DNA of 64,000 nt from Isurus oxyrinchus. Lineage: Eukaryota. Below are positions 236 to 27,472 of this stretch, one piece after another. Each line of letters begins with the position of its first letter. The stretch's first letter is position 1. The stretch is taken from assembly GCA_026770705.1 (NCBI GenBank), contig JANJGN010000052.1, positions 248,001 to 312,000 on the forward strand, given 5' to 3'. The position numbers and the translations under genes were made by a program. The notes under the pieces are model-generated. The model did no database searches. It had not been told where the DNA came from and worked only from the letters and a program-made list of their open reading frames with translations.

Positions 236-299
236 GTAAATTTGAGTCTAGTGGATCCACAAACCATCCAGAGTTAAATATTGATATTTCTCTCCCCAG

Positions 300-3512: not shown

Positions 3513-3539
3513 AGCTTTGTGCAGCAACAATCTCATTAT

Positions 3540-4135
3540 GGAACAGAAGGACGGCATTCAGCCCATCGACTCCATGCTGTCTCTCTGTAGAGCAATACAG
3601 TCAGTCCCATTCCCCCGCTCTATCCCCGTATCCCTGCAAGTTTATTTCCCCTCAAGTGTCCGTCCAATTTCCGTTTGAAATCGTTCATCGTCTCCGCTTC
3701 CACCATCCTCGTAGGCAGCGAGTTCCAGCTCATTACCACTCGCTGTGTAAAAAAGTTCCTCCTCACATCCCCCCTCTGCCCACAACCTTCAATCTGTGTC
3801 CCCCAGTCCTTGTCCCATCAGCTAATGGCAACAGCTTCTCTTTGTCTACCTGATCTAAACCCATCATCATCTTGTACACCTCGATCAGATCCCCCCTCAA
3901 TCTCCTTTGCTCCAAGGAGAACAACCCCAGCTTCTCCAACCCAACCTTGTAGCTAAAATCCCTCATCCCTGGACCCATTCTGCTCAATCTCCTCCCCACC
4001 CTCTCAAGGACCCTCACTTCCTTCCCAAAGTGAGGAGACCAGAACTGGACACAATACTCTAGTTGTGACCTAACCAGAGCTTTATAAATGTTCAGCATAA
4101 CCTCCCTGTGTTTGTACTCAATCCCTCCATTTATG
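3540..4135 (-). mobile_element. CR1-type LINE 3' fragment
   Basis: YKALVRSQLEYCVQFWSP...LGLFSLEQRRLRGDLIEVYK, typical of the CR1 ORF2 C-terminus. Confidence 0.88.
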
Positions 4136-4494
4136 AAAAGCTTATTCTTTCCATCAGCACAAACAGCAATTTCCAAGCGGACTCCCATCAGCAGACAGAG
4201 TGCAATGAAACATCGACATGCCTGCTTCTTAATGTACGGAGAGAATCCTGGAACGAGAGATTCTCCTTCTTCTCCTCAGCAAGCTGAAACTTTTCCTTAT
4301 ACCTGGTGCTCCCCAGTGCTGCTGTGTGGACACATCATAACCACGGCATTGTCTGGCTGTGTGCAGCCAACATGGTCGAATAGGAATGAACAGAAATGTG
4401 ACGTTGCTAAACTCTGTTCTCTGATTGGAATGTGCTTTCTGAATGCTGCACCTTTTTCATGCTGCGATAGATTGTAAGAAGCATTTGGCTTATG

Positions 4495-4500
4495 AATAAA
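4495..4500 (+). terminator. Candidate polyadenylation signal (AATAAA) of the left activating Siglec
   Basis: AATAAA inside a block homologous to the 3' UTR of the central inhibitory gene. Confidence 0.4.
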
Positions 4501-4844
4501 ATTACATTGATTAACTCAAGTGATTAAAATGCTCAGCCTGTTCTGTAGATATTTAGAGATTAAAATTCTTATTTTGCTGCAAAATTCTTGGCTCAAAGAC
4601 ATTACTTCATGTTGTCACGTTTTCCAATCAGATGAATTCCTCTGTCCATCTTTATAATAGAAATTTCCAATGTAAACATGTCACATTGTAGCTGCACACA
4701 CTTGCCAGTGGCTGGTGTGATATCAAAGCTGTCTTGCTGCTCAGAAACAGCGAGAAATATTCCTGTTGTGTGCATGAACTTCATGTTAGCATGAGACACA
4801 GGCATCAGATGCAATTTTGTGCAATTTGTACAATGTTCTTTAGA

Positions 4845-5460
4845 CAGCGCAGCACTCCCTCAGTACTGAACCTCCAACAGCGCAGCACTCCCTCAGTTCA
4901 GACCCTCCTACAGTGCAGCACTCCTTCAGATCAGACCCTCCGACAATGCAGCACTCCCTCAGTTCAAACCCTCCGACAGTGCAGCACTCCCTCAGTTCAG
5001 ACCCTCCGACTGTGCAGCAGTCCCTCAGTTCAAACCCTCAGACAGTGCAGCACTCCATCAGTTCAGAACCTCCGACAGTGCAGCACTCTCTCAGTTCAAA
5101 CCATCCGACAGTGCAGCACTCTAACAGTTCAAACCCTCCGACAGTGCAGCTCTCCCTCAGTTCAAACCCTCCGACAGTGCAGCACTCCCTCAGTTCAGAG
5201 CCTCCGACAGTGCAGCACTCCCTCAGCTCAGACCCTCCGACAGTGCAGCACTCCCTCAGTACTGAACCTCCGACAGTGCAGCACTCCCTCAGTTCAAACC
5301 CTCCGACAGTGCAGCTCTCCCTCAGTTCAAACCCTCCGACAGTGCAGCACTCCCTCAGTTCAGAGCCTCCGACAGTGCAGCACTCCCTCAGCTCAGACCC
5401 TCCGACAGTGCAGCACTCCCTCAGTACTGAACCTCCGACAGTGCCGCACTCCCTCAGTTC
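4845..5460. repeat. 33-bp minisatellite (acagtgcagcactccctcagttcagaccctccg)
   Basis: About 18 tandem units; source of the spurious QTLRQCSTPSV ORFs. Mirrored, shorter, at 57555-58035. Confidence 0.92.
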
Positions 5461-6967
5461 TTCTCCGCCGATGCTGCCAGACCTGCTGAGTTTTTCCAGG
5501 TATTTCTGTTTCTGTTTCTGTTTTGGATTTCCAGCATCTGCAGTTGTTTTGCTTTTAGTGCTGGGCAGTTCCTCAGCAAGGATTCGGGCCACAAAACATT
5601 GCGAGTGCTGTGGGTCTGCGCCACGATTTAGAGAGCTGTGCTTGGCACGCCTATTCTAGTCCCAGTCCAGTGTGGTGGGGAGAGTCTGGCAGTCCTGGGT
5701 TGGTGGTGCCCAGCATGGTGTGCAGGACGTGGTCAGTCCCTCACACACGTCGGTCCTGGGGGTGGGTGGCTTGATACTAGGCCGCAGGTGGCACAATCCC
5801 AGTCAGGGGAGGCATCTGCAGCCTGTCAGTGGGGAGCAGGTAATATAGAGAGTAGGGGTGGGGGTGGGAATCGAGGGGGGCCGGTGGTCTCTGTAAGTCA
5901 CGGTACAATGGGCCTCTAGTTGGAGAGAGGTCAGGTCTACATGGGGCATTGGGATGTCAACATCAGACAGTCTAGGGAGGAGGACTGGGATGTCAACCCC
6001 GAACACAATAAGATCAAGGATTAGAGAGGAAGGGAGGAGACTGATTGGAAGGAGGGGAATGTGCACATTATGCTCCTCCAGCACGATGGGAGGGACTGTG
6101 ATGGTTACGGGGGTGGGGGAGTGACGTGTGAGGGGATAGACGCTTACCTGGTGGTATTGCCTCAGCCTCACCCTTTTTCAAGCTGATCCAATGTCGCAGT
6201 TGAAGAATAAGCTACAAAACAAATTGGCAGGGGAGGTCTCCCAGGGCCTGTGGGAGACATCACCCACTGCATCTTCGGCCTGTTTGAAGGGGCACCCGAA
6301 CAATTCCGGCTTTTCCAAATGATGAGGAAGACACAGCTGCACCCCGAGTCCCCTACTGGGGATCCAGAAGGTTGCAATAGCGCTGCGAGGGACTCATGGG
6401 CTCCACAGTGACTCCCTAATTAGCGACTGGAAGGTTTATGTTCATTTATCTTTATTATCCGTTCATATTGAGCAATGGAGCTCCTGATCTGTCACCTTTC
6501 TGTACCTCGTCCAATGCTTCTGTTATCAGGACTTCCACATCGATGTGAAAGAGCCATGATGATAGCAGACAGTCGCACAATGGGAATGGCACTAGGCCAG
6601 TGATCCAGAGGCCCAGGTGAATGCTTTGAAGGCACGGGTTCAAATCCCACCACGGCAGCTGGAGGAATTTCAATTCGATTAATCAATAAATTTAATTGAT
6701 TGATACATTTTTTTCTTATTCATTTCAGGGATGTTGGTGTCGCTGACTAGGCCAGTATTTGTTGCCCATCCCCAATTGCCTTTGAGAACATCTGGATATC
6801 TGAGTTAGGATCAGGAGTAGGTCACTCAGCCCCTCGAACCTGCTCCGCCATTCAGTAAGATCATGGCTGATCTGATTGTCACCTCAACCTCACATTCCTG
6901 CCTACCCCCAATGACCTTTCACCCCCTTGTTAATCAAGAATCTATCTAGCTCTGTGGAAGGGGAGCC

Positions 6968-8905
6968 AATCAATTGGGCTGCTTTGTCCTGGATGGTGTC
7001 GAGCTTCTTGAGTGTTGTTGGAGCTGCACTCATCCAGGCATGTGGAGAGTATTCCATCACACTCCTGACTTGTGCGTTGTAGATGGTGGACAGGCTTTGG
7101 GGAGTCAGGAGGTGAGTTACTGTCTGCAGGGTTCCCAGCCTCTGACCTGCTCTTGCAGCCACAGTGTTTATATGGCTGGTCCAGTTCAGTTTCTGCTCAA
7201 TGGTAACTCCCAGGATGTTGATATTGGGGGATTCATTGATGGTAATGCCATTGAATGCCAAGGGGCGATGGTTATGAATGGTCTGTGGAATATTCTGGTA
7301 CAAAATTTCAACACTCGGACTCCAGATGCAATATTCAAGTGGTTCCTATATTACGCATGTGGGGAGCAAACGCTGGGCAGTCCAGGCGCTTCTCCACCGA
7401 GGTTCAAATGAGCACAGTTTATATATTTTTACTCTCAGTTACAACGTAATGGTATTAGTTAGACAAAGGCCACAGCACAATGACCCCCCGGTGGGCTGAT
7501 AATTGTGTTCTTGTACAGTAATTACAGGGCAGAGACTGGCTATTGTCCTTTTGAGACAGCAAAGAATCTATGTTTGTTCGCTACAAAAGGTTTCCGGGGG
7601 CTGACTGGATGTGGTTCAAGGCCATCGGACGGTGTGAAATAACCTTCCCCATTTCTTGATTGAGTCACCCAGTGTCCTTGTGTGTGTGTCTCCCATTTCC
7701 TCATTGCAAATTTCCAACGGATCCCTTAGTACAGGTTTTTAAGTTTTCACGTAAGGATGTGTACGCTTTGGCGCCCTAGCTGTTGGTCCTGGCTGGCTCT
7801 TGAACATAAATCCAAATTTTCTGCACCTTCAATGAGATTCTCTCTTGTTGGAGTTGGTCATTGCTTGGTACTTGTGTGGCATGAATGTTACTTGTCACCT
7901 GTCAGCCCAAGCCTGGATGTTGTCCAGGTCTTGCTGCATTTGGACATAACTTGCTTCAGTATCTGAGGAGCCGTGAATGGTGCTGAACATTGTGCAAACA
8001 TCAGCAAACATCCCCACTTCTGACCTTATGATGGAAGGAAGGTCATTGATGAAGCAGTTGAAGATGTTTGAGCCTAGGACACTACCCTGAGTAACTCCTG
8101 CAGTGATGTCCTGGAACTGAGATGATTGACCCCCAATAATCACAACCATCGTCCTTTGTGCTGGGTATGACTCCAAGCAGCGGAGAGTTTTCCCCCGATT
8201 CCCATTGACTCCAGTTTTGCTCGGGCTCCTTGATTTGCCACACTCAGTCAAATGCTGCCTTGATATCAAGGACAGTCACTCTCACCTCTGGAGTTCAGCT
8301 CATTTGTGCATGTTTGAACCAAGGCTGTAATGAGGCCAGGAGCTGAATGATCCTGGTGGAACACAAACTGAGCGTCAGTGAGCAGGTTCTTGCTAAGCAG
8401 GTGCTGCTTGCAAGCACTGTTGATGACCCCTTCCATCACTTTAGTAATGATCAAGAATAGACTGCTGGGGAATTGGCTGGGTTGGATTTGTCCTGCTTTT
8501 TGTGTACAGGACGTACCCCATAGCCGGGTAGTTGCCAGTGTTGCAGCTGTACTAGAAAATTCCAGAAAAGCTTGGCTAGGGGCGCAGCAAGTTCTGGAGC
8601 ACAAGTCTTCAGTACTATTGCCAGAATATTGTCAGGGCCTGGAGCCTTTGCAATATCCAGTGCCTTCAGCCCTTTCTTGATGTCACGTGGAATTAATCGA
8701 ATTGGCTAAAGATTGGCATCTCTGATGCTGGGGATCTCCGGAGGAGGCCGAGATGGATCACCCACTCAGCACTTCTGGCTGAAGATTGTTGCGCATGCTT
8801 CAGTCTTGTCTTTTGCACCGATGTGCTGGGCTCCTCCATCATTGAGGATGGGGATATTTGTGGAGCCTCCTCCTCCAGTGAGTTGTTTAATTGTCCATGA
8901 CTGGA
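6968..8905 (-). mobile_element. Degenerate non-LTR retrotransposon (CR1/L2 group) reverse transcriptase, interrupted at ~7274-7843
   Basis: Frameshifted motifs GVTQGSVLG, MFADV, QDLDNIQAWAD, QVRSVMEYSP, LDTIQDKAA. Confidence 0.88.
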
Positions 8906-10769
8906 TGTGACATCTGGAATGCGAAGCTAGTCTCAGTAATGGTGACCATGAAACTAAGGCCAATTGTTGCAAAAACCCATCTGGGTCACTAATGCCCTTT
9001 GGGGAAGGAAACCTGCCGTCCTTACCCATTCTGGCCTACGTGTGACTCCTGACCCACAGCAATGTGGTTGACTCTTAACTGGCCCCTGAAATGGCCGAGC
9101 AAGCCACTGAGTTATATCAAAACCCGCCACAGACCAGTCAAACCAGGTGAACTGCAGCACTTCGAAAAGGCAGCTCAGCACCCCCTTCTCAAGGGGTCAG
9201 TCAGGAACAGGTAACAAACGCTGTCCACATCCCGTGAAAGAATTTTGGTAAAAAGGTAACGTGTATCACCAGTCACGGCCAGCGCCAACCCCCCCACCCC
9301 TACCTGATTGCACCAGTTTCAGATTACACCAGGTCAATGAACGGATAGAAACTCAAACCAATGAGATGAGCACAGAGAAGGATCAAGCCAGAGAGAGTTG
9401 GTGGGAAGAATTGGGAAAGCAACAAAAAAGGCAGAGCGGACACTAACACTATAACAAAGTAAAGACCAGAGGAGGAAGGAAGCAAGTGCGAAGAGGAATT
9501 GAGAGTAGAGCTGGTAGGCTGCTTGTCGAAGCCAAGGAACCTCCATAGGTCACACCCACAGTGCTGTTGGGGAGGGTGATACATGATTTTGACCCAGGAT
9601 CATCAAGTGTTGCACTGGCAGAGCCTTTAAAGTAAAGGGACCTTTACTACCCATGCACCCCCCCGCCCTACAAAGCTGTTGACCTGCTGAGTCCACCTGT
9701 ACAGGCAACCTCCAGACAGTTGGCTACAGAGGCCATTGCAGCTGCTGAATATGACTTCCAGTTTCAAACCCTTCATGAATGCAAGGATGGAGAATTCAGC
9801 AGGAATATTCCTGCACATCCTGTGGCAGATCCTGTAAATAAAAGGGACCTTCACTCACTCCCCAAAGCTGCTGACCTGCTGATTCACATCTACAGGCAAC
9901 CTCCAAATAGTCAACTAGAGAAGACAACGCAGCTGCTGAATGTGACTCCTAGTTTTAAACCCTTCACTCTGGAAAGAAGGAATCCAGTGCAATGGCCTCA
10001 GTATGATTCTTCACAGAAACTGATTTTAAATCTCATGTCTAAGTATTATTTTTCCTTTGCTTACATTTTAATCCCTGCACCTGATGGCTTTATCGCTTCA
10101 ACTTAAATAACTTTCAGCAGGAGCCAGGTTCAAATTGAATGGACAAGCAGGCTTGGGGGGCCAAAAGGCCTACTCCTGCTTCTGTTTATTTATGTTGGTG
10201 TTGTTATGTAGTGGAACTAGAGAGGTTATAGCAGTTATGAGAACATTAAGCAAACAGCAGCAAGAATTGAACACCTACGTTGTGGTTTATGAAAAGGTTT
10301 TTAACCTGGTCAACTGGTAAAATCTGTTGAAAGTGGGCTATCATGGCGTGTGCCGTTTGTGTGATATTTGTAACAACGTTCTCGATGTCGGAACAGTTTG
10401 CATTGAACAAAGCTGATCTTTACCCAGAACTTCAGAGGAAGGGGGGACAATTGTTCCCTGGTGTGGGGGGCATGGTGGGAGGGGAGGGTGAGGGGGAGAC
10501 AAGTAGCCTGAAATACCAAGCCAGACACTTTGTGAAGACAAAAGTTGTTTATTCATTTTTTTTCACAAATCATAATCTTTACAATTAAAGTCCCGACAAG
10601 ATAATGGTGAATCATGAACACATTGTCGGGGTGAATCTGTGCCCGGGAGCATAAAGCAGCAAAATCAAAATCCCGCTTTACATCTCTCTGAATTTTAACT
10701 ATCATTAACCCCAGTAACATCCATTCAAATGACTTAGTCATAAGATTCCTCACACATTCACTTGCACAC

Positions 10770-11240
10770 TCACACACCCACACCCACACAGACACACTGA
10801 CACACTCACTCATTCACATTGACACACACTGACACAGTCACACACACCCACACAGACACACTGACACACTCACTCATTCACATTGACACACACTGACACA
10901 GTCACACACACCCACACAGACACACTGACACACTCACTCATTCACATTGACACACACTGACACAGTCACACACACCCACACAGACACACTGACACACTCA
11001 CTCATTCACATTGACACACACTGACACAGTCACACACACCCACACAGACACACTGACACACTCACTCATTCACATTGACACACACTGACACAGTCACACA
11101 CACCCACACAGACACACTGACACACTCACTCATTCACATTGACACACACTGACAGTCACACACACCCACACAGACACACTGACACACTCACTCATTCACA
11201 TTGACACACACATATTGACAGTCACACACACACACACACA
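10770..11240. repeat. ~58-bp CA-rich tandem repeat
   Basis: Repeated cacagacacactgacacactcactcattcacattgacacacactgacacagtcacacacacc. Mirrored at ~51960-52260. Confidence 0.85.
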
Positions 11241-11571
11241 CGCTCATAAAGACAGACACAAACACAGTCACGTGAGGTGAATAGTGTCGATGTATTTAAG
11301 GGGAAGCTGGATAAACACACGAGGGAGAAATGAATAGAAGGATATGGTGATGGGGTGAGATGGAGAAGGGGTGGGCGGAGACTCGTGTGGAGCAGAAACA
11401 CCAGCATGGAGCAGATGGGCCGAATGGCTTCTTTCCCTGCTGTAAAACGCAGGTAAAGTTTCAGTTGGAATTAATGAACAGGGCCTGTGTGAAATAGATT
11501 GCTAAGCAATGATAAGGAGGGGAGAGGCTGTGGCATGGTGCAGGATGACCTTGCGTGAATGAGGCCAGGGT

Positions 11572-14500
11572 CTAATATCTACAGCAGAGACCACAAGTCT
11601 CATTTGGTTCTCTCCAATTACAGCAGTTACAGCAGAATCTGCAGAGCTGCTGTCTGCCCATTCTCTTCTGGCGCTGCAGCAAGGAGCCCTGGAAAAGCAG
11701 GAGCACAATAGGTGAGAACATTCCGGAAAGAAAGAAGGCATCATTTCAATCAGGCGCGTCATTGGAAGGAGGATGGCACATTTCTATAGCGCCTTTCCCC
11801 TCCTCAGGATGGCCCAAAGTGTTCCACAGCTGAAGGAAGGACTTTTTCTGAAGTGAGCTCACCGCTGTAATGTAGGAAACGCAGCAGGCAATTCACGCAC
11901 AGCAAGATCCCACAAACAGAAATGTGATAATGGCCCCGATTTTCAGTTTTTTACCAATGTCAGTTGAGGGATAAATGTTTGCCCCAGGAAAGCGGACATA
12001 ACTCCACCCATCCAGCCCCCACCACCCCCTCCACACATACCCCCCAACTCCTGACGCACTTCATTTAAATTGTGGCCATGGAATCCTCTATATCCACCTG
12101 AGAGGGCAGATTGGTTGCCCCAGTTTAATGTCTCATCTGAAAGACAGCGCCTTCAACAGTGCAGCACCCCCTCAGTACTGACCCTCCGACTGTGCAGCAC
12201 TCCCTCAGTACTGACTCTGACAATGCAGCACATCCTCAGTACTGACCCTCCAACAGTGCAGCACTCCCTCAAGACTGACCCTCTGACAATGCAACACTCC
12301 CTCAGTACTGACCCTCCGACTGTGCATCCCCCCGCCGGTACTGACCCTTCGACAGTGCAACACTCCCTCAAGACTGACCCTCTGACAATGCAGCACTCCC
12401 TCAGTACTAACCCTCTGACAATGCAGCACTCCCTCAGTACTGACCCTCTGACAATGCAGCACACCCTCAATACTGACCCTCCGATAGCTCGGTCATTCCT
12501 CAATTACGCCTGGTGGTCCTTTTAACTCAGAGCTGAGAGTCGCAGAGAATCGAGCAGACACCCTGAACTGACACTTGCAGTGCAAGTACTGGGAGCGCGC
12601 TGGTCATTATCATGCTGCTGTCTGTGGGATCTTACTGTGCGCCAATGGATGATTCTTTTCCCACATTACATCAGTGACCTCACATGAAAGAAAAAAGCAC
12701 TTGATTGTCTGCGAAACACTTTGGGACGTCCTGATGTGTTCGAAGGCGCTAGAGAAATGCAAGTCCTCTTTGTCTTTCACTCGATCCTCTAAGGTGTCTG
12801 TTGATTAACCAGCCTCTCGGTGTTTGATGTAGGCCTGGTTATAAACAGTTAGAAGGATCAAATATCAAAAATGCTTTGGCTGACAGTCAAACCGATTGTG
12901 CATTCGGAGAGATGAGATACGGTCTGCGCACAATGACTCCAGTCTCTGGCACTGACTGCCGCCTGGGATCTCCCTTCCACATAACACTCACAACTTGCAT
13001 TTACACAGCGCCTCTGGCATTGCAAAATGTCCCAGCCCACATTACTGGAGCGTAAATCAGAGAGAAGTCTAACACTGAGTCACATATGGAGATATTAGGG
13101 TTAGGTGACCAAAAGCTTGGTCAAAGATGTCAGTTTTTAAGGAGCGTCTTAAAGGAGAGAGAGAGAGAGAGGCAGAGAGGTTAAGGGAGGGTATTCCGGA
13201 GCTCAGGGCCCCAGGCAGCTGAAGGCATGGCCACCAATGGTGGAGCGTTGGGAATCAGGGGGACCCGGGAGATGCAGTAATGTCAGAGATTTTGGAGGAA
13301 CATCGGGACCGGAGGAGGTGTTCTCCTGCTCCATATCTCTCTCTCTCTTCCTCTCTTCCACTCCTCCTCTCCCTGTCTCTCTCTCTCCTACTCTTCCGCT
13401 CAATTGCCCTCTCTCCCAATCTTTCTCTCCTCTCTCCCTTTTCCTGTCTCTCTCCCTCTCTCTCCCCTGTCTCCTTCTCCCACTCTGTATCTCTCCCTCT
13501 CTCTCACACTATTTTTGTACCTTTCGCTCACTCTGTAACTCTCCCTTTCCTGTTAATTTCTCTCTCTTGGACAATCTCTCTTCCCTTTTCACTTTCCCTC
13601 ACTCTGCATCTCTTCTTTAATTTCTCCCTCTGTCACTCTCTCCCACCTATGTTCTTTCCCTTTCACCCCTCCCCGTCCCACTCTCTGTCTCTCTCTTCCA
13701 ATCCCTCCCTCCCTCATTCCATCCCTCTCTCCGACTCTCGACTCCCAGCCTCTCTTTAACCCACTCCCAGGCTGGATCAGTCTCCCTCTCACTATTCCCG
13801 GCGTGGGTTACATTTAAAATTCCTGTGGGGATATGTTCACTTCCTTGGAATTGCCTCTTCCCAGCTTTGCAAAAAAAGTTGGGGGGGGCTCGATTTCAAA
13901 CATGCCTCCTGAGTATAACCGAGACAGACTGCCACTGAAATCAGCTTGAAATCAGAAAACTTTCTGTGGAAGAAACGAGCAGGGAGAAACCTTAAAATAA
14001 GGAATGAATTTCCACCTACCGTGTCCGGGGAATCCACAGATTTCTCAATCGTCGAAGAACCTAAAGCAGTGTCAACCTGCAAAAAGAAAGAATTTATCAG
14101 GGAGAAAGTGAGAGGAGGATTGAGGGAGAGGGAGAGAGAGAGAGAGAGGTACAGGAGAGAGAGGGGGAGGAGGACAGACTTGCATTTCTCTAACGCCTTT
14201 CACCACATCCCAAAGCATTTCACAGCCACTGAAGGATGTTTTTGAAGTGCACTCACACTGTAGGAAATGTGGCAGCTGATTTGTGCACAGCAAGATCCCA
14301 CAAATAGCAATGTGATCATGGCCTAGATCATCTGTTTTTGGTGATGTTGGGTGAGGGATAAATATTGGTCCCAGGACACCGGGGAGAACACCCCCTGCTC
14401 TTCCTCCAAATAGTGGCTGTGGGATCTTTCACACCCGCCCGAGAGGGCAGACGGGGGACTCGGTTTAATGTCTCATTCAACATTGTTGTGCTCCCTCAGT

Positions 14501-15976
14501 ACTAACCCTTTGACACTGCAGCACTCCCTCAGTACTAACCCTTCGATAGTGCTGCACTCCCACAGTATTGTCCCTCCGTCAGTGCAGCGCTACCTCAGTA
14601 CTGACCCTCCGACAGTGCAACACTTCCACAGTACTGACCCTGTAACAATGCAGCACTTCCTCAGTACTGACCTCCGACAGTATAGCACTCACTCAGTACT
14701 GTCCCTCCAATAGTGCAACACTTCCACACTACTGACCCTCTGACAGTCCAGCACTCCCTCAGCACGGAGTGTTGACCGACGTTATGGGACTGAATTCCCT
14801 GGAGTGAGACTCAGACCAGAGATTTAGGTAGGGTTGTTCCGGCTGGAGGAGGTTACAGAGATAGGGAGGGTTGTAGAGGCTGTAGGAGGTAACAGAGATA
14901 GGGAGGGTTCTAGAGGCTGTAGGAGGTGACAGAGATAGGGAAGGTTGTAGGGGCTGTAGGAGGTTACAGAGATAGGGAGGTGAGTAGGGGCTGTAGGAGG
15001 TTAAAGAGATGGGGGGGGTTGTGGGGGCTGGAGGAGGTTACAGAGGTAGGGAGGGTTGTAGAGGCTGGAGGAGGTTACCAAAATAGATACTGTTGTAGGG
15101 GCCATAGTAGGTTACAGAGATAGGGAGAGTTATAGTGTGGAGAGGACGTTATAGAGTTCATGAGCATTGTAGGGGCTGGAGGAGGTTACAGTGATTCTGA
15201 GGGTCGTGGGGCCTGGAGGAGGTTACAGAGATAGGGAGGGTTGTAGGGCCTGGAGGAGGTTACAGAGATAGGGAGGGTTGTAGGGTCTGGAGCAGGTTAC
15301 AGAGATAGGGAGGGTTGTAGGGTCTAGAGGAGGTTACAGTGATCATGAGGGTTGTGGGGCCTGGGGGAGGTTACAGAGATAGGTAGGGTTGTAGGGGCTG
15401 GAGGAGGTTACAGAGATAGGGAGGTTTATAGGGGCTGGAGGAGGTTACAGAGATAGGGAGGGTTGTAGGGGCTGGAGGAGGTTACGGAGATAGGGACAGT
15501 TGTAGGGGCTGGAGGAAGTTACAGAGATAGGGATTGTTGTAGGGGCTGGAGGAGGTTACAGATATAGGGAGGGTTGTAGCGGCTGGAGGAGGTTACAGAG
15601 ATAGGGAGGGGTGTAGGGGCTGGAGGAGGTTACAGAGATAGGGAGGGTTGTAAGGCCTGGTGGAGGTTACAGAGATAGGGAGTGGCTGAGGAGGGATTGA
15701 AAACAAGAATGAGAATTTCAGGGGAAACGACAGAAGGAAATGATGTTAAATTCATAGAGGGCGACAATATTAAAGGCACGAACATAATAATATCAAACTG
15801 CGGAAGAGACCAGTCTATCTGGGTGGTAGACGTAGAGTCATGTGCAAGAAACACCTCACCCAGAGGGACATCTCTTAGCTTACCCTCGACAAGGAGAAGA
15901 AGTGACTCAGCTGCAGGGAGAGCAGCAAAGTCAGAGTGAACAAGACAAGTCGCCATTTCATCTGGGAGCTTCCCAT
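11572..15976 (-). CDS. HAMP: Hepcidin prepropeptide, left copy (intact); exons 15976-15884, 14076-14020, 11688-11572; 88 aa
   Basis: MGSSQMKWRLVLFTLTLLLSLQLSHFFSLSR|VDTALGSSTIEKSVDSPDT|GSLLQRQKR-MGRQQLCRFCCNCCNWREPNETCGLCCRY*. Signal peptide, furin site, 8-Cys hepcidin pattern, three exons with phase-0 GT-AG introns, upstream TATA-like box. Confidence 0.93.
11780..12155. mobile_element. Deu-domain SINE-like remnant (HAMP intron 2); related copies ~14180-14480, ~25555-25815 and their mirrors
   Basis: Recurrent gcacagcaagatcccacaaacagcaatgtgat...gttgagggataaat motif, recognised as a shark SINE-like core. Confidence 0.6.
12156..12485. repeat. 33-bp minisatellite (HAMP intron 2); a further array at 14490-14765 lies in intron 1
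   Basis: Tandem cagtgcagcactccctcagtactgaccctctga units. Confidence 0.88.
14840..15685. repeat. 39-bp minisatellite (ggaggaggttacagagatagggagggttgtaggggct) in HAMP intron 1
   Basis: About 21 tandem units; longer mirror at 47270-48370. Confidence 0.9.
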
Positions 15977-16045
15977 CTCTGCCTGTCTCTTCTGATCTTC
16001 TGGCTCTGCTTTGATGCTTTGGTTTGTAACTAGAGGAGCTTCCTG

Positions 16046-16195
16046 CTCTTATACCTGAAACACTTGAAGGGGACAGCCGGGGGCGGGTTGCTGTGTGGTA
16101 TCACACCCATTTCTGGATATTGCAGTGTCGATGTTCCCTGTCCCACTGGCCTGGGACCAGCAGTAAGGTCACTGGGACATTGACTGTCTGGCACC
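16046..16195 (-). promoter_or_regulatory. Putative HAMP proximal promoter, left copy: TATAAGAG (16053-16046), GC box (16079-16087), degenerate BMP-RE GGTGCC-AGAC (16195-16186)
   Basis: TATA-like box ~70 nt upstream of the ATG. Motifs were read directly; function is inferred. Confidence 0.55.
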
Positions 16196-16619
16196 GAGAA
16201 CTATCAGTCCCTCCGCAACGCCCTTCACCTTGTGCAGATATGTGTTCATATTGACGCAACACAACATAGCAAAAACAGAGGGGCTGGTTCTTATGTCGGC
16301 AAATCAGGTGAACCGCATGCCCCCTAACCCCTTACTCCTCTCATTGCTACACTTACTATTTTACAAATTGTGTGCGTTGCTTTTATTTTGGACAAGGGGC
16401 CTCGAGGGGGAACTGATTTACGCTGAGGTTTAGGGGTTAACTGTTTACCATGTGGAGACTGTCTGTCACCAGCTTTGTTCATGGTTTATCCAGGAACATT
16501 GAAGGGCATGAACGTTCTTGCTTTGTATGGAACAAGTTACCAACTGGGTTCAGTCATCGACTCAGACTCACATCAACATAAACTGGCTTCTGACAGGTAA
16601 GTTTCTATTACATGAGGGT

Positions 16620-17220
16620 AGGAGGAGGCCATTTGGCCCCTCGAGCCTGCTCCACCATTCAATGAGATCATGGCTGATCTGCAAACTAGCCCCATATGGC
16701 TTTGTCCCATCTCCTTTAATACCTTTGGATAACAAAAATCTATCAGTCTCACAGGTTTAAAATGAACAACTTGATCGTGCATCAGTTCCTGTTTGGGGAA
16801 GAGAGTTCCAAATTTCTCCCACCCTTTGTACTTCCTAATTTAATTCCTTTTTAGGCTCTGACCCTGAGTCCCAGACTCCCCCCAACCAGGGGAAATGGTT
16901 TCTCTTTATCGCCCCCGATCTGTTCCCCTTATTATCATGCGAACTTTCATCAAATCTCCTGCTTAACATTCTAACTTCCAGGGAATACAAGCCGAGTTTG
17001 TGTTTAATCTCTCCTTGTGATTTAACCCTTGGAGTCCCGGTCTCATTCTGGTAAACTGACACTGCTCTCCCTCCGAGGTCAATATATCCTTCCTAAGGTG
17101 TGGGGCCCAGAATGTCTCACAGTGACTCCAGGTGTGGTCTAGCCAGGGCTTTATGTAGACTGAAGCATGACCTCTGCCCCCTTATATTCTAATCCGTGAG
17201 ATAGAAAGGGCAGAGTTCCA
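16620..17220 (-). mobile_element. CR1-type LINE 3' fragment
   Basis: GLEYKGAEVMLQ / LGLYSLE motifs and a CR1 3' tail. Mirrored at ~45685-46285. Confidence 0.75.
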
Positions 17221-18289
17221 GAATTGTTGTGTTTATTCGACAACAGAATAACAGAGGAAGGTTTCCTCTCTGCCCTCTTCAGCCCCACTGGGAAGGTCAG
17301 GATGAGAAGGTTGGGCTGGGTCCCCTGTACTGGACACTCGCTGAATCTTCCAATGATAGTTCTGGGCTGGATTTCAAAATGCATAGACAAGGATTCAGTG
17401 TTCCATCACATTCTGCCTTTGTCTCTTTTCCTCTCGTTCTCTTTCTCTACCATCCTCTCTCTCTATCTATCTATCTTTCTCCTCATTCTCTCCTGCTTCA
17501 TCTCTATCACTTTCTTTCTACTTCTTTGTGTGTCTCTGTCTGTCTCTCTCTCTCTCACTCTTTCTTTCCTTGTCCTTATCTCTTTCAGTGTCTCCCTCTT
17601 TCTCTCTCTCTCTCTCTCTCTCTAAATGTGACCCTCTCTAACAGTTTGGCCCAGTACTCTTATTTCCCTGTTTTACTGGTGTTCCATTTGAAGGTATACA
17701 AGACCAGATCAGACCAGAATGTTTATTTTCCAGTGTTTACTGTGTTTTTTTTCATTCTGGGTGTCTCTCGACTCTGTCTGTCCCTCTCTGTCCTTTTATT
17801 TCATTCTTTCATGTGATGTGGACATCACTGCCTAGGCCAGCATTTATTGCCCAACCCTAATTGCCCTTGTTCAGAGGCCACTTTTTAAAAGTGAACCACA
17901 TTGCTGTGGGTCTGGAGTCACATGTAGGCCAGACCAGGTAAGGACAGCAGATTTCCCTCCCTAAAGGGCATTTGTGACCCAAATACAAGAATCAGCAATG
18001 GTTTCCTGGTCATCATCGGACTTTTAATTCCAGGTTTTTATTGAATTGAAATTCCACCAACTGCTGTGGTGAGATTCTAACCAGGGTCCCAGGAGCATTA
18101 CACTGGGTCTCTGGATTACTGGTCCAGCGAAAATACCATCAGGCCCCCTCCTCCCCACTCTTCCCTTCCACCATCTTTCACAATCGCTCTCTCTCTCTCT
18201 CACTCTCCTTCTCTCTTCCCCCTCTCTCAGTCTCTGTCTGTCTCTCAATCTCTCTATCGCTCTCTATCTCCTGGAGGCTCTCTCTCTGA

Positions 18290-18915
18290 CTGTCTCCCTC
18301 CCTATATCTGTAACCTCCTCTCTCTGTCCCTTTCCTCCAGCCCCTACAACCCTCCCTATCTCTGTAACCTCCACCTGCCCCTACAATCCTCCCCATCTCT
18401 GTAACCTCCTCCACCTCCCACAACCCTCCCTATATCTGTAACCTCCTTCACAAGCCCATACAATCCTCCCTATCCCTGTAACAACCTCCAGCCCGACAAC
18501 ACCCCTATACATGTCACCTCCTCTAGCCACTGTAACCCTAATAATCTCCCAAGCCTCCACCAGCCTTGACAATCCTGCCCATCTCTGTAACATCCTCCAA
18601 CCACCACAACCCTCCCTATTTCTGTAATCTCTTCCAGTCCCTACAACCCTCCCTATCTCTACAACCTGCTCCACCCCCTGCAACTCGCCCTATCTCTGTG
18701 TCATCCTCCAGCCCCTACAACCCTCCCTATACCTGTAACCTCCTCCAGCCCCTACAACCCTCCCTATCTCTGGAACAGCTTCCAGCACTTACAACCCTCC
18801 CTATCTCTGTAACCTCCTCCAGCCCCTACAACACTCCTTATCTCTGTAACCTCCTCCAGCCCCTACAACCCTCCCTATCTCTGTAACCTCCTCCAGCCCC
18901 TGTAACCCTCCCCAT
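18290..18915. repeat. 39-bp minisatellite at the inner end of the left outer arm
   Basis: ctgtaacctcctccagcccctacaaccctccctatct units; shorter mirror at 44255-44610. Confidence 0.88.
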
Positions 18916-18943
18916 CTCTTGAAGGGTTCTCAAAATTTCCAAC

Positions 18944-19304
18944 TGTCAAGGAACCCTGGGTTGGTGAGCATGACCCCTGACCTCTCCTAGTGCAATTTAG
19001 TTAGGGTTTGGGGGTGGGACAAGGGTAAGGGCATTAGTAGCGTGATTCTCCCTCGTTATGCCGTGTGTTCCCCATTCTTAACTCAGTGTACTTTGTAAGT
19101 CTGTATAATCTCAGTGTCATCCTAATGTTATAAGTTCATTTGTGACTTCAGTAAACTCAGTTTTTGTCTTGCACCAAAACCAGTTGTCTGCTGCACTTTG
19201 TGACAAGCCCCGAATAAGTCCAAGGTCTAGAACCCAGGGAGTGGGAGTGATTCAGACGGCTCAGAAGTCGCAGGTGAAGCTGACACACACCACCACACCC
19301 TACA
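18944..19304. mobile_element. Possible solo LTR
   Basis: About 360 bp beginning TGTCAAGG and ending CCTACA, with an internal AGTAAA. No clear target-site duplication. Confidence 0.3.
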
Positions 19305-19585
19305 AGGGGCTGAATGGCCTCCTCCTGTTCCTGTATAACGGACATAAGTGGCAGAATGGCCTCCTCCTGTTTCTGTGTAACAGTCTTGAGGGGGCTGAAT
19401 GGCCTCCTCCTGTTCCTGTGTAACAGTCTCGAGGGGGCTGAATGGGCCTCTTCTGGTTCCTGTGTAACAGGCTCGAGGGGACTGAATGGCCTCCTCCTGT
19501 TCCTGTGTAACAGGCTTGAGGGGGCTGAATGGCCTCCTCCTGTTCCTGTGTAACAGGCTCAAGGGGCTGAATGGCCTCCTTCTGC
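19305..19585. repeat. ~41-bp minisatellite derived from a LINE 3' tail
   Basis: gggctgaatggcctcctcctgttcctgtgtaacaggctcgag, about 7 units. Confidence 0.85.
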
Positions 19586-19859
19586 ACTGTAAACTTGTTG
19601 TGATACTGTAACTGCCTCTTTGGTTTCATTCAGCTGAATCTTCAGCTCTTCAGTCTCTTCCTTGTATCTCTTGCCTTCCTCCTGGAACATTGGACATGGT
19701 TGGGTCTTCCCTGCCAACTGTTTCTTCAGTTTGCTCAGAGCGGCACAGAATTCGCTTTCTTTCTCTTCAGGATTTTCCAGTGGAACCAACTCTGACCTGA
19801 GGGACACTTGCAGCCTGTGAGGATGCTTCAATTCTTCAAACTCATTCCGAGATACACTC

Positions 19860-20525
19860 TCATATTCCCCCAGCAACTCAGCAACTCCTCCAGTGAAACA
19901 TTTCAGAGCAGCTGAGCTTGGTTTTCTGGAACCAGTCTCGGCCCAGAAGACTAGGGCCCTCACCTGTCGCTATGATCACTGGAAGCTGGGCTGTCTGCTG
20001 CCTGTAGGACACAGGTACTGGGACCAGGTCCTTTCCCTGTATGGATTCTCCAGTGTGTGTCTTCAGCTGATCCATTGTTGGCTCTAAATTCAGCGTCTGG
20101 GTTCCTTCATTTAGCTGTTTAAATGTGGGCTCTTCCACCACTGTGTCTGAGGCTCCCGTATCTGCCCCATTACTAGTGGCTGCCCATTCACTTGGGTTGT
20201 GATGGTTATAGGTTCAGTTTTTACCACTGTGACATTGGACAGGGAATAGACATCGGTATCAGCAGCTTCAGGCTCTGTGATATTATTCACTTCCATCATG
20301 TTGGTGCACTGTCTGATGGGCTGTCTCGATTTCACCCTGCATTGCTTTATTACCCGCCCCTTTCTTGTGGCAGTGATGGCATTCTGCCCCCTTGAACCTG
20401 CAGGTGTCCGGTACGAGCTCACTCCCCCCCACATCGAGAACAGGCCAACTTCGGAGTTGCTGCTGAAATACTCCCACGAAGCCTTTTAGTTTGTGGAGCA
20501 GCAGAGACTGTCTCTCGCTTGGCGG

Positions 20526-20560
<35 letters not shown>

Positions 20561-20952
20561 GTTTGAGCCTCACGCCCGGTGGTTGGTTCCTGTCCCAGCT
20601 GAGGACTGGTGCCATGTTGTAAATCCCGCCAGTCTCTCCCAGCACTTTCCATGCCTGGCGCTATTTCCATGGTGCGCTTCAAATCGATGTCGGCTTCTGC
20701 GAGTAAACGGCTCTGAATGGCGTTGGGGTGAACGACACAAACCAATCGGCCCCGCAACATGTCATTGAGTGTGTCTCCGAGGTCCCAGTGCTCAGTCACC
20801 TGCTTCCACTTCACTGTATAGGTTGCGATGGACTCTCCCTGGGCCCTTACTCTGGAGTTAAACTTAAACCTTTTCATTATTACCCACGGCTTCAGCTGAA
20901 AATACATCTTCATGAGGTCGACTAATTGGTGAAAAGATTTAGAATTGGGTGC
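19860..20952 (-). mobile_element. Ty3/Gypsy LTR retrotransposon gag-protease fragment (frameshifted)
   Basis: KSFHQLVDLMK...RFKFNSR...GESIA...LRGRLVC gag, two CCHC-like knuckles (CSRCGG, CHHCHKKG), gat acg gga gcc tca = DTGAS protease motif, GPSLLGRDW. Confidence 0.85.
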
Positions 20953-22106
20953 AATACACGTCACTGTCTTCAGCTCTGAGACTGTCAATCCTCACCGAAC
21001 AATTCTTCCCTTCCAAGTCGCCGATTATTTTAGCACGTCCCACGAATGTGTCCACCCCATAATTGGGATCTTTGGTGTATGTGATGGTATATTTCCATCT
21101 ATACCAATATTTATACCAAGCTCCGTGCAGTGCTGTGTAAGAGTGGGAAGGAAAGTCAAAGCTACACGGAATAACCACACAAGAGCTGCTGATGGCCCTC
21201 CGAGGCAGCGCCTTCATAGACTATCCCTCTGACATCACTCCTGAAAGGCAACAAGGGAGGGGACTGAACATCAAAAAGCAGAATATTACTTCAATGGAGA
21301 GAGTCTACAGAATGCGGTACAGAGGGATCTGGGTGTCCATGTACATGAATCACAGAAAGTCAGCATTCAGGAACAGCACGGAATGAGGAAGGCAAGTGGA
21401 ATGTTGGCCTTTATTGCAAAGGGATGGAGTATAAAAGGAGGGAAGTCTTGCTACAACTATACAGGGCGTTGGTGAGATTGTATCAGGAGCAGTGTGTACA
21501 GTTCTGGTCTCCTTACTTAGGGAGGGATAGACTCTGCATTGGAGGCAGTTCAGAGGAGGATCACTGGGCTGATTCCTGGGATGAAGGGGGTTTGTCTTAT
21601 GAGGAAATGTTGAGCAGGTTGGGCCCTGTATCCATTGGAGTTTAGAAGAATGAGAGGTGATCTTATTGAAACATATAAGATTCTGAGGTGGTGGGGGGTT
21701 TGACAGGGTGGATGCTGAGGGGATGTTACCCCTTGTGGGGGAATCCTGTGAAGCAATAAGGATGTTTTACTGCATTAAAGGTGCTATATAAATGCACTGT
21801 CATTCCTATTGAAACAAGCTCTCTGATGCACAAACAGAAAATGCTGGAGAAACTCAGCAGGTCTGACAGCATCTGTGGAGAGAGAAACAGAGTTGGTGTT
21901 TCGAGTCCGTATGAGACTTTTTCTTTTGCTAAATTCTCTGACTCGCTAATCACTCACTCTCTGTGTGATCACTAACCCTGTTCTCTAAAATTAAACGTTC
22001 ACTTCCTCACTCCAGGAAAGAATCCAATTCCCTGAGTTCCGATCAGTAATGAATTTGTACCTTGCAGCAAGCTGATGAAGATCAATATCAGACCGACCTC
22101 TCCCAT
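20953..22106 (-). pseudogene. Divergent MAG/Siglec-like pseudogene: leader exon 22106-22061, V exon 21240-20953 (truncated)
   Basis: Leader MGEVGLILIFISLLQG|gt and tttcag| acceptor. In-frame TAG at 21223-21221 where Trp is expected. SCVVIPCSFDFP..HGAWY...GRAKIIGDLEGKNCSVRIDSLRAEDSDVY is then fused to gag. Confidence 0.85.
21275..21750 (+). mobile_element. CR1-type LINE fragment in the leader-V intron of the pseudogene
   Basis: YKRREVLLQLYRALVR..EQCVQFWSP; collinear with 62800-63270. Confidence 0.85.
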
Positions 22107-22379
22107 CTTCAGTTCCTCATCTAAATGGAAAATGATAAAGACAGAGACTTTTTCATAAATTGTCCCCAGCGTTTCTTCCTCAAACAACAACAACTTGTGT
22201 TTAAATGGCACCTTTCAGGGAATTAAACAGCCCCAGGGAATTATCTAATGTCAAGACAAGGAAGGAGAGATTGAGAAGGGACATCGCAAACCGATTCACC
22301 AAACACGGCAAAAATTCATTGTTCCCTCACTCCCTGTGCTGGGTGTCCAGCTTTTTCTCTCAGTGAGTTTAGCCCTCAC

Positions 22380-23706
22380 ACTCTCTATCTATCGCACTCT
22401 TCTGCTCTATCTCTCTCTCTCACACACACACACATTTTCTCTCTAACACTCACAATCTGTCTCTATCACATTCTTCTGCTCTATCTCTCTCTCTCACACA
22501 CACACATTCTCTCTCTAACACTCACAATCTCTCTCTATCACACTCTTCTGCTCTATCTCTCTCTCTCTCACACACACATTCTCTCTCTAACACTCACAAT
22601 CTGTCTCTATCACACTCTTCTGCTCTCTCTCTCTCTCTCACACACACACATTCTCTCACTAACACTCACAATCTCTCTCTATCACACTCCTCTGCTCTAT
22701 CTCTCTCTCACACACACACATTCTCTCTCTAACATTCACAATCTCTCTCTATCACACTCTTCTGCTCTCTCTCTCTCTCTCTCTCACACACACATTCTCG
22801 CTCTTACACTCACAAAATTTTTCTCTATCACATTCTTCTGCTCTATCTCTCTCACACACACACATTCTCTCTCTAACATTCACAATCTCTCTCTATCGCA
22901 CTCTTCTGCTCTCTATCTCTCTCTCTCTCACACACACACACATTCTCTCTCTAACACTCACAATCTCTCTCTATCGCACTCTTCTGCTCTCTATCTCTCT
23001 CTCACACACACACATTCTCTCTCTAACATTCACAATCTCTCTCTATCACACTCTTCTGCTCTATCTCTCTCTCTCTCACACACACATTCTCTCTCTAACA
23101 CTCACAATCTCTCTCTATCACACTCTTCTGCTCTATCTCTCTCTCACACACACACACATTCTCTCTCTAACACTCACAATCTCTCTCTATCACACTCCTC
23201 TGCTCTATCTCTCTCTCACACACACACATTCTCTCTCTAACATTCACAATCTCTCTCTATCACACTCTTCTGCTCTCTCTCTCTCTCTCTCTCACACACA
23301 CATTCTCGCTCTTACACTCACAAAATTTTTCTCTATCACACTCTTCTGCTCTATCTCTGTCACACACACACATTCTCTCTCTAACATTCACAATCTCTCT
23401 CTATCGCACTCTTCTGCTCTCTATCTCTCTCTCTCTCACACACACACATTCTCTCTCTAACACTCACAATCTCTCTCTATCACACTCTTCTGCTCTCTAT
23501 CTCTCTCTCACACACACACATTCTCTCTCTAACATTCACAATCTCTCTCTATCACACTCTTCTGCTCTATCTCTCTCTCTCTCACACACACATTCTCTCT
23601 CTAACACTCACAATCTCTCTCTATCACACTCTTCTGCTCTATCTCTCTCTCTCTCTCACACATTCTCTCTCTAACACTCACAATCTCTCTCTATCACACT
23701 CTTCTG

Positions 23707-23737
<31 letters not shown>

Positions 23738-27416: not shown

Positions 27417-27472
<56 letters not shown>

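What the first reader, a model, noticed from the sequence alone, without database searches (positions are those of the whole stretch)
11572..15976. Hidden, intact three-exon hepcidin gene missed by the ORF track
Seen: three short exons (93, 57 and 117 nt) buried in repeat-rich introns splice in phase 0 into an 88-aa signal-pro-RQKR-mature peptide with the hepcidin cysteine skeleton C-xx-CC-x-CC-(loop)-C-Gx-CC. Established: vertebrate HAMP genes have this three-exon, furin-processed, 8-Cys design. Inference: this is a hepcidin of a probable cartilaginous fish that automated annotation could easily overlook.
Basis: partly seen in the sequence, partly recalled or inferred. Interest (0 to 1): 0.9.

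Follow-up and report, generated by a model that had tools for sequence, protein, structure and literature searches.

The report
Divergent hepcidin gene in a shark
This is a real, intact three-exon gene of the hepcidin family in a shark genome, but it is one of many recent copies and has lost half of the surface patch that the iron hormone needs, so it is more likely a defence peptide than the iron regulator.

Summary
On the minus strand, exons at 15976-15884, 14076-14020 and 11688-11572 have GT/AG borders in phase 0. They encode 31 + 19 + 38 residues: signal peptide, propeptide, RQKR site and an 8-Cys peptide.

- **Family:** exon 3 alone passes Pfam's Hepcidin cut-off (31.6 bits against 27).
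- **Splicing model:** the three exons align without gaps to an 88-aa RefSeq model of the basking shark. That model is named only "uncharacterized protein".
- **Host:** neighbouring Siglec exons match shark proteins best.

The gene is not unique. The window is a large inverted duplication, and the second copy has a mutated exon-1 splice donor. The scan also noted similar genes on other DNA of this genome.

Against the basking-shark model the prepro part is 88% identical, while non-Cys mature positions are 19% identical. All 8 Cys and the 8-residue loop are kept. His3 and Phe4 of the ferroportin-binding patch are replaced by Arg and Gln, and the loop carries an NET sequon.

My reading is a diversified, probably host-defence hepcidin paralogue.

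Interest is moderate to low.

The parts
16047..16053 (-). TATA-like box (TATAAGA), 71-77 nt upstream of the ATG. It implies a 5' UTR of about 45 nt.
   Evidence: Read directly. It is identical in copy B. There is no ATG between it and the start codon. Its function is inferred, not tested.
15884..15976 (-). Exon 1 coding part, 93 nt, 31 aa. It has a Met start, an n-region with Lys and Arg, a 12-residue Leu-rich h-region, and the start of the propeptide.
   Evidence: Translation. The Kyte-Doolittle 9-mer maximum is 2.7 over residues 10-19. It is 29/31 identical to residues 1-31 of P0015. The donor GTAAGC follows at 15883.
14077..15883 (-). Intron 1, 1807 nt, GT..AG, phase 0. It is mostly 37-bp and 33-bp minisatellites.
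14020..14076 (-). Exon 2, 57 nt, 19 aa, propeptide.
   Evidence: Translation. It is 16/19 identical to residues 32-50 of P0015. It has a polypyrimidine tract plus CAG acceptor and a GTAGGT donor.
11689..14019 (-). Intron 2, 2331 nt, GT..AG, phase 0. It holds a 33-bp array and CT-rich low complexity.
11572..11688 (-). Exon 3 coding part, 117 nt with TAG. It encodes the end of the propeptide, the RQKR site and the mature peptide.
   Evidence: Translation. Pfam Hepcidin 31.6 bits against a gathering score of 27.
11662..11673 (-). RQKR, an RX(K/R)R proprotein-convertase site immediately before the mature peptide.
   Evidence: The motif is as described for fish hepcidins (PMC3325200). P0015 has REKR at the same columns.
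11575..11661 (-). Predicted 29-aa mature peptide with 8 Cys, an 8-residue loop between Cys5 and Cys6, pI 8.2 and net charge about +1.4.
   Evidence: It aligns to bass hepcidin 1S6W with a 4-residue insertion in the loop. Alone it scores 24.9 bits on Pfam Hepcidin.
11596..11604 (-). N-E-T sequon in the hairpin loop, a possible N-glycosylation site. It is present in both window copies and absent from P0015.
   Evidence: Occupancy is not testable here.
46975..51629 (+). Inverted duplicate, copy B. Exons lie at 46975-47067, 49133-49189 and 51513-51629. Exons 1-2 are identical to copy A. Exon 3 has 5 differences, all non-synonymous and all in the mature peptide. The exon-1 donor reads TT instead of GT at 47068.
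1..27470 (.). Left arm of a large inverted duplication. Its partner is 62980-39890. The arm carries Siglec-type exons plus the hepcidin gene.
   Evidence: Self-comparison. Unique sequence is 98-100% identical, with 1.3-1.9% substitutions.

Best explanation
Copy A is an intact member of a recently amplified, shark-lineage group of hepcidin paralogues that sit inside Siglec gene clusters.

Proposed mechanism:
1. The gene is transcribed from its own TATA-like promoter.
2. Three exons are spliced in phase 0 into an 88-residue prepropeptide.
3. The Leu-rich signal peptide directs secretion.
4. A furin-type convertase cuts after RQKR.
5. The released 29-residue peptide folds into the hepcidin hairpin, held by four disulfides. 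The turn is extended to 8 residues and may carry an N-glycan on NET.

Two of the four side chains of the ferroportin-binding patch are replaced, His3 by Arg and Phe4 by Gln. The mature part has diverged strongly while the prepro part has not. The peptide therefore most likely acts as a diversified host-defence or immunomodulatory peptide, a functional analogue of teleost type-2 hepcidins, and not as the iron hormone.

Shown here: the gene anatomy, family membership, collinearity with an annotated shark model, the divergence pattern and the shark origin.

Inferred: expression, processing, the disulfide fold, glycosylation and function.
For: Anatomy.

Family: Pfam Hepcidin 31.6 bits for copy A and 29.9 for copy B, against a gathering score of 27.

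Splicing model: gap-free exon-by-exon alignment to XP_078389754.1 (P0015, 88 aa, Pfam 44.8 bits), at 94%, 84% and 50% identity for exons 1, 2 and 3.

Divergence pattern against P0015:
- The prepro part is 52/59 identical.
- Non-Cys mature positions are 4/21 identical.
- All 8 Cys, the Gly after Cys6 and the loop length are kept.
- This fits selection that keeps the scaffold and changes the surface.

Canonical versus divergent type: P0015's mature peptide aligns to human hepcidin-25 (1M4F, 6WBV) and keeps His3, a hydrophobic residue at 4, Val6 and Tyr9. The window copies have Arg3 and Gln4. The bioactive epitope of human hepcidin is the first 9 residues, in particular His3, Phe4, Ile6 and Phe9 (PMC7915682).

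Precedent in teleosts:
- Hamp1 regulates ferroportin and Hamp2 does not (PMC5665920).
- Hamp2 shows positive selection in the mature peptide (PMC3325200).
- The motif CRFCCNCC of copy A is that of sea bass Hamp2.

Between copies A and B, substitutions are 5/87 in mature codons, all non-synonymous. They are 0/177 in the rest of the CDS and 1.3-1.9% in flanking unique DNA.

Context: Siglec V-set exons lie on both sides. The scan noted many similar genes elsewhere in this genome. Those notes are leads only.
Against: The duplication is recent, at 1-2% divergence, so an intact frame says little about constraint on this particular copy. Its twin already has a broken donor.

There is no canonical poly(A) hexamer within 670 nt of the stop, only AATACA at +276.

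The net charge is only about +1.4, which is low for a membrane-active peptide.

Leu6, Cys7 and Phe9 of the ferroportin patch are kept, so some ferroportin activity is not excluded.

The clustering of A/B differences is only weakly significant, P 0.005-0.03. It could also come from gene conversion with a third copy.

The AlphaFold models were low-confidence and helical, so the fold is untested.
Confidence: 0.58

Rival explanations
1. It is a recently duplicated, silent or decaying copy. It is intact only because too little time has passed for it to break.
For: Unique DNA of the two arms differs by only 1.3-1.9%. The twin copy B has its exon-1 donor changed from GT to TT. The nearest usable donors either shift the frame or read into a stop. 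An earlier scan note reports another copy with a 1-base-short exon 1 (unchecked). There is no canonical poly(A) signal and no RNA evidence.
Against: All signals are intact in copy A: TATA-like box, Kozak context, two donors, two acceptors, the furin site and 8 Cys. All 5 differences from copy B are amino-acid changes that spare every Cys. The paralogue type as a whole kept its scaffold through 81% replacement of non-Cys mature positions relative to P0015. That pattern requires past selection on this type.
Confidence: 0.22
2. It is the shark's iron-regulatory hepcidin, or one of several. On this reading it binds ferroportin despite the changed N-terminus, and the divergence from the basking-shark model reflects species or copy variation within one functional class.
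For: Six residues precede the first Cys, as in hepcidin-25 and Hamp1. Leu6, Cys7 and Phe9 are kept. The gene lies beside Siglec/MAG-family genes, as HAMP lies near MAG and USF2 on human chromosome 19. Hepcidin was detected in nurse shark plasma (PMC9207270).
Against: His3 and Phe4 are replaced by Arg and Gln in both window copies, and copy B also has Pro6. A canonical-looking version with the motif SHLSVC exists in a related shark. In sea bass the type without the QSH motif does not regulate ferroportin (PMC5665920, PMC8502971). USF2 is not in the window.
Confidence: 0.15
3. It is a chance arrangement of short ORFs, or an assembly artefact without biological reality.
For: The window is a palindrome-like inverted duplication with six N runs in and near its spacer. 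Such layouts can arise from mis-joins.
Against: Exon 3 passes the Pfam gathering score. An independent RefSeq model in another shark has the same three-exon plan. The skeleton occurs only twice in six frames. The arms differ by 1-2% and by repeat lengths, so they are not one sequence used twice. Even a mis-join would leave the gene itself real.
Confidence: 0.02

Closest known systems
XP_078389754.1, 'uncharacterized protein LOC144671611 isoform X2' of Cetorhinus maximus (P0015)
   Same: It is 88 aa with the same 31/19/38 exon-sized blocks. It aligns without gaps, at 94% and 84% identity in exons 1 and 2. The convertase site is at the same columns. It has 8 Cys and the same 8-residue loop length.
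   Different: Its mature peptide is only 41% identical, and 4/21 at non-Cys positions. It keeps the canonical N-terminal motif SHLSVC, with His3 and Leu4, and aligns to human hepcidin-25. It is Lys-rich, with charge +4.5 against +1.4, and has no N-glycosylation sequon.
Teleost type-2 hepcidins (e.g. sea bass Hamp2; bass hepcidin structure 1S6W)
   Same: They share the CRFCCNCC core and a C-terminal CCR plus aromatic residue. They lack the QSH/DTH N-terminal motif. They are multi-copy, and their mature peptide diversifies while the prepro part is conserved.
   Different: The teleost loop is 5 residues against 8 here. A review states that HAMP2 is known only from actinopterygians (PMC3978493), so the likeness would be parallel evolution and not orthology. 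Antimicrobial activity is shown for Hamp2 (PMC8502971) and is untested here.
Human hepcidin-25 (HAMP; PDB 1M4F, 2KEF, 6WBV)
   Same: It has a three-exon gene, a prepropeptide with a convertase site, an 8-Cys hairpin scaffold and six residues before Cys1. Positions 6, 7 and 9 are similar (Leu, Cys, Phe). The neighbourhood holds MAG/Siglec-family genes.
   Different: His3 and Phe4 are replaced. The loop is 8 residues against 4. The peptide is 29 residues against 25, has an NET sequon, and is multi-copy.

Membership tests
Hepcidin family (Pfam PF06446) | Score at or above the curated gathering score of the family HMM | tested here: met
   Exon 3 alone scores 31.6 bits against 27, E 2e-07. Copy B scores 29.9. 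The 29-aa mature part alone scores 24.9, below the cut-off because it is truncated.
Hepcidin family (Pfam PF06446) | Eight-cysteine skeleton C-x2-CC-x-CC-loop-C-x2-CC in the mature peptide | tested here: met
   The pattern occurs only at the two exon 3 copies in six frames of the window.
Hepcidin family (Pfam PF06446) | [quoted passage not shown] | tested here: met
   GT/AG borders in phase 0. The exons are collinear, without gaps, with a spliced RefSeq model of another shark.
Hepcidin family (Pfam PF06446) | N-terminal signal peptide | tested here: met
   There are Lys and Arg in the n-region and a 12-residue Leu-rich core with hydropathy up to 2.7. In the model of the homologue, residues 1-30 form a helix at pLDDT 72-91 by block. 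No dedicated signal-peptide predictor was on hand, and the cleavage site is undetermined.
Hepcidin family (Pfam PF06446) | RX(K/R)R proprotein-convertase site directly before the mature peptide | tested here: met
   RQKR at 11673-11662. The motif is as in PMC3325200.
Hepcidin family (Pfam PF06446) | Bent beta-hairpin fold with four disulfides | tested here: inconclusive
   AlphaFold2 without a deep alignment gave helical models of low confidence. The exon 3 peptide had pLDDT 71 and pTM 0.38. The mature part of P0015 had pLDDT about 50. No fold search was run on them.
Hepcidin family (Pfam PF06446) | Expression, typically in liver, inducible by iron or infection | not testable with these tools
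Iron-hormone type hepcidin (mammalian HAMP / fish Hamp1) | Conserved N-terminal ferroportin-binding patch His3, Phe4 (Leu in fish), Ile6, Phe9 | tested here: not met
   Copy A has Arg3, Gln4, Leu6 and Phe9. Copy B has Arg3, Gln4, Pro6 and Phe9. The patch is defined in PMC7915682. The basking-shark homologue keeps His3, Leu4, Val6 and Tyr9.
Iron-hormone type hepcidin (mammalian HAMP / fish Hamp1) | Conserved neighbourhood with USF2 and MAG | tested here: inconclusive
   Siglec/MAG-family V-set exons flank the gene. Their best solved relatives are Siglec-5, -7, -8, MAG and CD33. No USF2 was seen in the window, and the cluster is amplified. The human neighbourhood is taken from PMC4453067.
Teleost HAMP2 clade | Orthology to actinopterygian hamp2 genes | not tested
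The literature places HAMP2 only in actinopterygians. The resemblance (CRFCCNCC, no QSH) is functional or analogous at most.

The most novel reading that the evidence does not exclude
Lamniform sharks, and perhaps sharks in general, have two hepcidin types that arose independently of the teleost Hamp1/Hamp2 split. One is a canonical, human-like hormone type. The other is a multi-copy, fast-diversifying, possibly N-glycosylated long-loop type. The second type has been co-amplified with activating and inhibitory Siglec receptor genes and serves host defence.
Probability: 0.35. Interest if true: 0.55.

Novelty: new member of a known kind. Interest (0 to 1): 0.35.

Why it matters
Hepcidin is the master iron hormone and also an antimicrobial peptide. 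Very little on it in cartilaginous fish turned up in the searched open literature. The only concrete item was its detection in nurse shark plasma, without a whale shark orthologue in the protein set (PMC9207270).

This locus shows three things:
- Shark hepcidin genes have the standard three-exon plan but a longer hairpin loop.
- At least one shark lineage holds both a canonical-looking and a divergent type.
- The divergent type is being copied together with Siglec receptor genes.

If the divergent type is expressed, it would be a second, independent case of a hormone/defence split in this family. That would be useful for asking which residues ferroportin control really needs.

In practice it also flags a small gene family that annotation pipelines leave unnamed or miss.

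Tried and rejected
**Reads**
No junction, strand or copy-specific expression evidence was obtained. They were left out of, or masked in, the later scripts and repeat scans.
- The look-up of sequencing runs gave only coded runs, none on record as RNA. I draw no conclusion on expression from them.

I could not check the public annotation of this locus or fetch orthologous loci.

**Joined precursor**
The 88-aa precursor was not searched, folded or looked up as one sequence. Full-length statements rest on the tool-given P0015.

**Homologue searches**
- The search of protein representatives with the 38-aa exon 3 peptide returned only a repetitive 577-aa protein, P0001, which I judge spurious.
- An in-frame extended reference over exon 3 found no candidate. 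The only relative later found shares no 5-residue word with exon 3.
- The ESM Atlas gave nothing for exon 3, with a best score of 0.76.
- NCBIfam gave nothing, as expected for a bacterial library.
- Exon 2 alone gave no Pfam hit.

**Structure**
- Both AlphaFold2 jobs gave low-confidence helical models. I rejected them as uninformative and ran no fold search.

**Promoter**
- A motif scan for BMP-RE, STAT, C/EBP, HNF4 and GATA gave only scattered weak matches. Copy A has no GGCGCC within 724 bp. I draw no regulatory claim from it.

**Selection from the A/B comparison**
- I rejected the idea that exons 1-2 being 100% identical between copies shows purifying selection. Flanking unique intron DNA is also 98-100% identical.
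Full report
**1. Observation**

| Exon | Coordinates | Length | Borders |
|---|---|---|---|
| 1 | 15976-15884 | 93 nt | starts at ATG; donor GTAAGC follows |
| 2 | 14076-14020 | 57 nt | follows a pyrimidine tract and CAG; donor GTAGGT follows |
| 3 | 11688-11572 | 117 nt with TAG | follows a pyrimidine tract and CAG |

Each exon is a whole number of codons, so both introns are in phase 0. The exons encode 31, 19 and 38 residues.

- Exon 1 has a Lys/Arg n-region and a 12-residue Leu-rich core. The hydropathy of 9-residue windows reaches 2.7.
- Exon 3 carries RQKR followed by 29 residues with the skeleton C-xx-CC-x-CC-(8)-C-Gx-CC.
- A TATA-like box, TATAAGA, lies at 16053-16047. No ATG lies between it and the start codon.
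- The introns are full of 33-bp and 37-bp minisatellites.
- No ORF of 80 aa or more reads the gene. That explains why an ORF track misses it.

The 88-residue precursor as one sequence was not searched or folded.

**2. More than chance**

- Exon 3 alone scores 31.6 bits, E 2e-07, on Pfam Hepcidin, above the curated cut-off of 27.
- The cysteine pattern occurs in only two places in six frames of the window: this exon and its duplicate. Other Cys-rich stretches are translated TG microsatellites.
- Among solved structures the only match is bass hepcidin 1S6W. It shares CRFCCNCC and the C-terminal CG-x-CCR, and the loop here has four extra residues.

**3. Independent support for the splicing model and the host**

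A search seeded with exon 1, given as an in-frame stop-free reference, found two RefSeq proteins of the basking shark Cetorhinus maximus at one locus, LOC144671611.

Isoform X2 (P0015, XP_078389754.1) is 88 aa and is named only "uncharacterized protein". It scores 44.8 bits on Pfam Hepcidin. It sits with hepcidin clusters in the ESM Atlas, at 0.93.

The three window exons align to it without a gap, in the order 31/19/38. Identity is 94%, 84% and 50%. An independent gene model in a related shark therefore joins exactly these exon equivalents.

The Siglec V-set exon at 281-751 gives the host:

| Species | Identity |
|---|---|
| Carcharodon carcharias | 93% |
| Scyliorhinus canicula | 78% |
| Rhincodon typus | 68% |
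| rays | 59-60% |

The genome is a shark's, nearest to the annotated lamniforms. I did not try to decode the coded run names.

**4. What kind of hepcidin**

Comparison with P0015:

| Feature | Window copy A | P0015 |
|---|---|---|
| Prepro identity | 52/59 (88%) | reference |
| Non-Cys mature identity | 4/21 (19%) | reference |
| Cys, Gly after Cys6, 8-residue loop | kept | kept |
| N-terminal positions 3, 4, 6, 9 | Arg, Gln, Leu, Phe | His, Leu, Val, Tyr |
| Net charge at pH 7 | about +1.4 | +4.5 |
| NET sequon in the loop | present | absent |

P0015's mature peptide begins with the motif SHLSVC after the Met and aligns to human hepcidin-25.

The bioactive epitope of human hepcidin is the first nine residues, in particular His3, Phe4, Ile6 and Phe9. 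The fold is a bent hairpin with disulfides 7-23, 10-13, 11-19 and 14-22 (PMC7915682). Copy B has Arg3, Gln4, Pro6 and Phe9. Half of the patch is therefore lost in both window copies.

In sea bass the QSH-type Hamp1 regulates ferroportin, and the CRFCCNCC-type Hamp2 does not but protects against infection (PMC5665920 and PMC8502971). Fish HAMP2 shows positive selection in the mature peptide (PMC3325200).

A conserved prepro part, a strongly changed surface and an untouched cysteine scaffold are what is expected of a diversifying defence peptide. They are not what is expected of neutral decay. If Cys codons had been replaced at the rate of the other mature positions, keeping all eight would be very unlikely (inference).

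The 8-residue loop is shared with the canonical-looking basking-shark protein. It is therefore a shark feature of the family and not a peculiarity of this copy.

**5. Surroundings**

The window is a large inverted duplication, with arms 1-27470 and 62980-39890. Unique sequence in the arms is 98-100% identical. Most differences lie in tandem repeats.

The second hepcidin copy lies at 46975-51629 on the plus strand.
- Its exons 1 and 2 are identical to copy A.
- Its exon 3 differs at five bases. All five are in mature-peptide codons and all are non-synonymous.
- That is 5/87, against 1.3-1.9% in flanking unique DNA, P 0.005-0.03. The rest of the CDS has 0/177. This is suggestive only, and gene conversion from a third copy would give the same picture.
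- Copy B's exon-1 donor reads TT instead of GT. The alternative donors either shift the frame or include a stop. Copy B may therefore be dead, unless this is an assembly error.

Both arms carry Siglec-type V-set, C2-set and I-set exons. Their best solved relatives are Siglec-5, -7, -8, MAG and CD33. This echoes the human neighbourhood, where HAMP lies with USF2 and near MAG on chromosome 19 (PMC4453067). USF2 is not in the window.

The scan's own notes report many similar hepcidin-like genes elsewhere in this genome, often in Siglec clusters and some damaged. I treat these as leads only. They fit an amplified family.

**6. Is it annotated or known?**

The protein collection holds RefSeq proteins of several sharks. 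Searches seeded from exon 3 and exon 1 found no identical or near-identical protein of 31-100 aa. They found only the basking-shark locus. Length limits and the word index make this weak evidence.

The library search found almost nothing on hepcidin in cartilaginous fish. The exception is a nurse-shark plasma proteome that lists hepcidin among proteins without a whale-shark orthologue (PMC9207270). A review states that HAMP2 is known only from actinopterygians (PMC3978493). The review's ranges for fish hepcidins fit this gene: precursor 81-96 aa, mature peptide 19-31 aa, three exons.

**7. What could not be done**

I sent those places to no search tool afterwards and worked beside them.
- Both structure predictions were of low confidence, and I do not use them.
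- No canonical poly(A) hexamer follows the stop.

**8. Verdict**

This is a genuine hepcidin-family gene of a shark.

It is not a lone hidden HAMP. It is one intact member of a recently amplified, divergent paralogue type, most likely a secreted defence peptide and not the iron hormone (about 0.58). The main rivals are a silent young duplicate (about 0.22) and a true iron-regulatory role (about 0.15).

It is a new member of a known kind, of moderate to low interest on its own. The family-level picture of two hepcidin types in sharks, one of them co-amplified with Siglec genes, would be of more interest if expression is shown.

Noticed in passing
window 47066-47073 (+): Copy B of the hepcidin gene has TT instead of GT at the exon-1 splice donor. 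The base is G at 15883 in copy A and T at 47068 in copy B. A GT one base upstream would shift the frame, and reading on hits TAA after three codons. Copy B may be a pseudogene, or this may be an assembly error.
   Followed up: partly
window 11589-11658 (-) against 51543-51612 (+): The five differences between the two exon 3 copies all fall in mature-peptide codons, and all change the amino acid (G/S, Q/R, L/P, N/H, L/I). No Cys is touched. That is 5/87 against a 1.3-1.9% background, P 0.005-0.03.
   Followed up: partly
window 1-27470 and 39890-62980: The whole window is a large inverted duplication around a spacer of about 12 kb that holds several N runs. The N runs are at 24168, 28603, 37171, 38348, 39748 and 41101. 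I could not tell whether the layout is real or a mis-join.
   Followed up: partly
window 281-751 (+), 1535-1834 (+), 20939-21217 (-), 28166-30862 (+): Siglec-type V-set, C2-set and I-set exons flank the hepcidin gene on both sides. Three near-identical Ig exons repeat in the spacer. The best annotated relative is a CD33-like protein of Carcharodon carcharias, at 93%.
   Followed up: partly
window 8281-8352 (-): A LINE reverse-transcriptase fragment lies 3.2 kb downstream of exon 3 on the same strand and is preceded by CAG. It is 92% identical over 24 aa to the third exon of basking-shark isoform X3 (P0014), which joins hepcidin exons 1-2 to this repeat. A similar alternative transcript may be possible here, or the match may simply reflect a common repeat.
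   Followed up: partly
window 16069-16089 (-) against 46866-46893 (+): Just upstream of the TATA-like box the two copies differ by a cluster of substitutions and a 7-nt insertion. Copy B has a short local duplication of a GTGTTTCAAG-like motif. Copy B has a GGCGCC at -226, and copy A has none within 724 bp.
   Followed up: no
window 10800-11266, 12156-12484, 14491-14762, 14825-15682: Minisatellites of 64, 33, 33 and 37 bp fill the 3' flank and both introns. The 33-bp unit recurs all over the window and gives long spurious ORFs in several frames.
   Followed up: no
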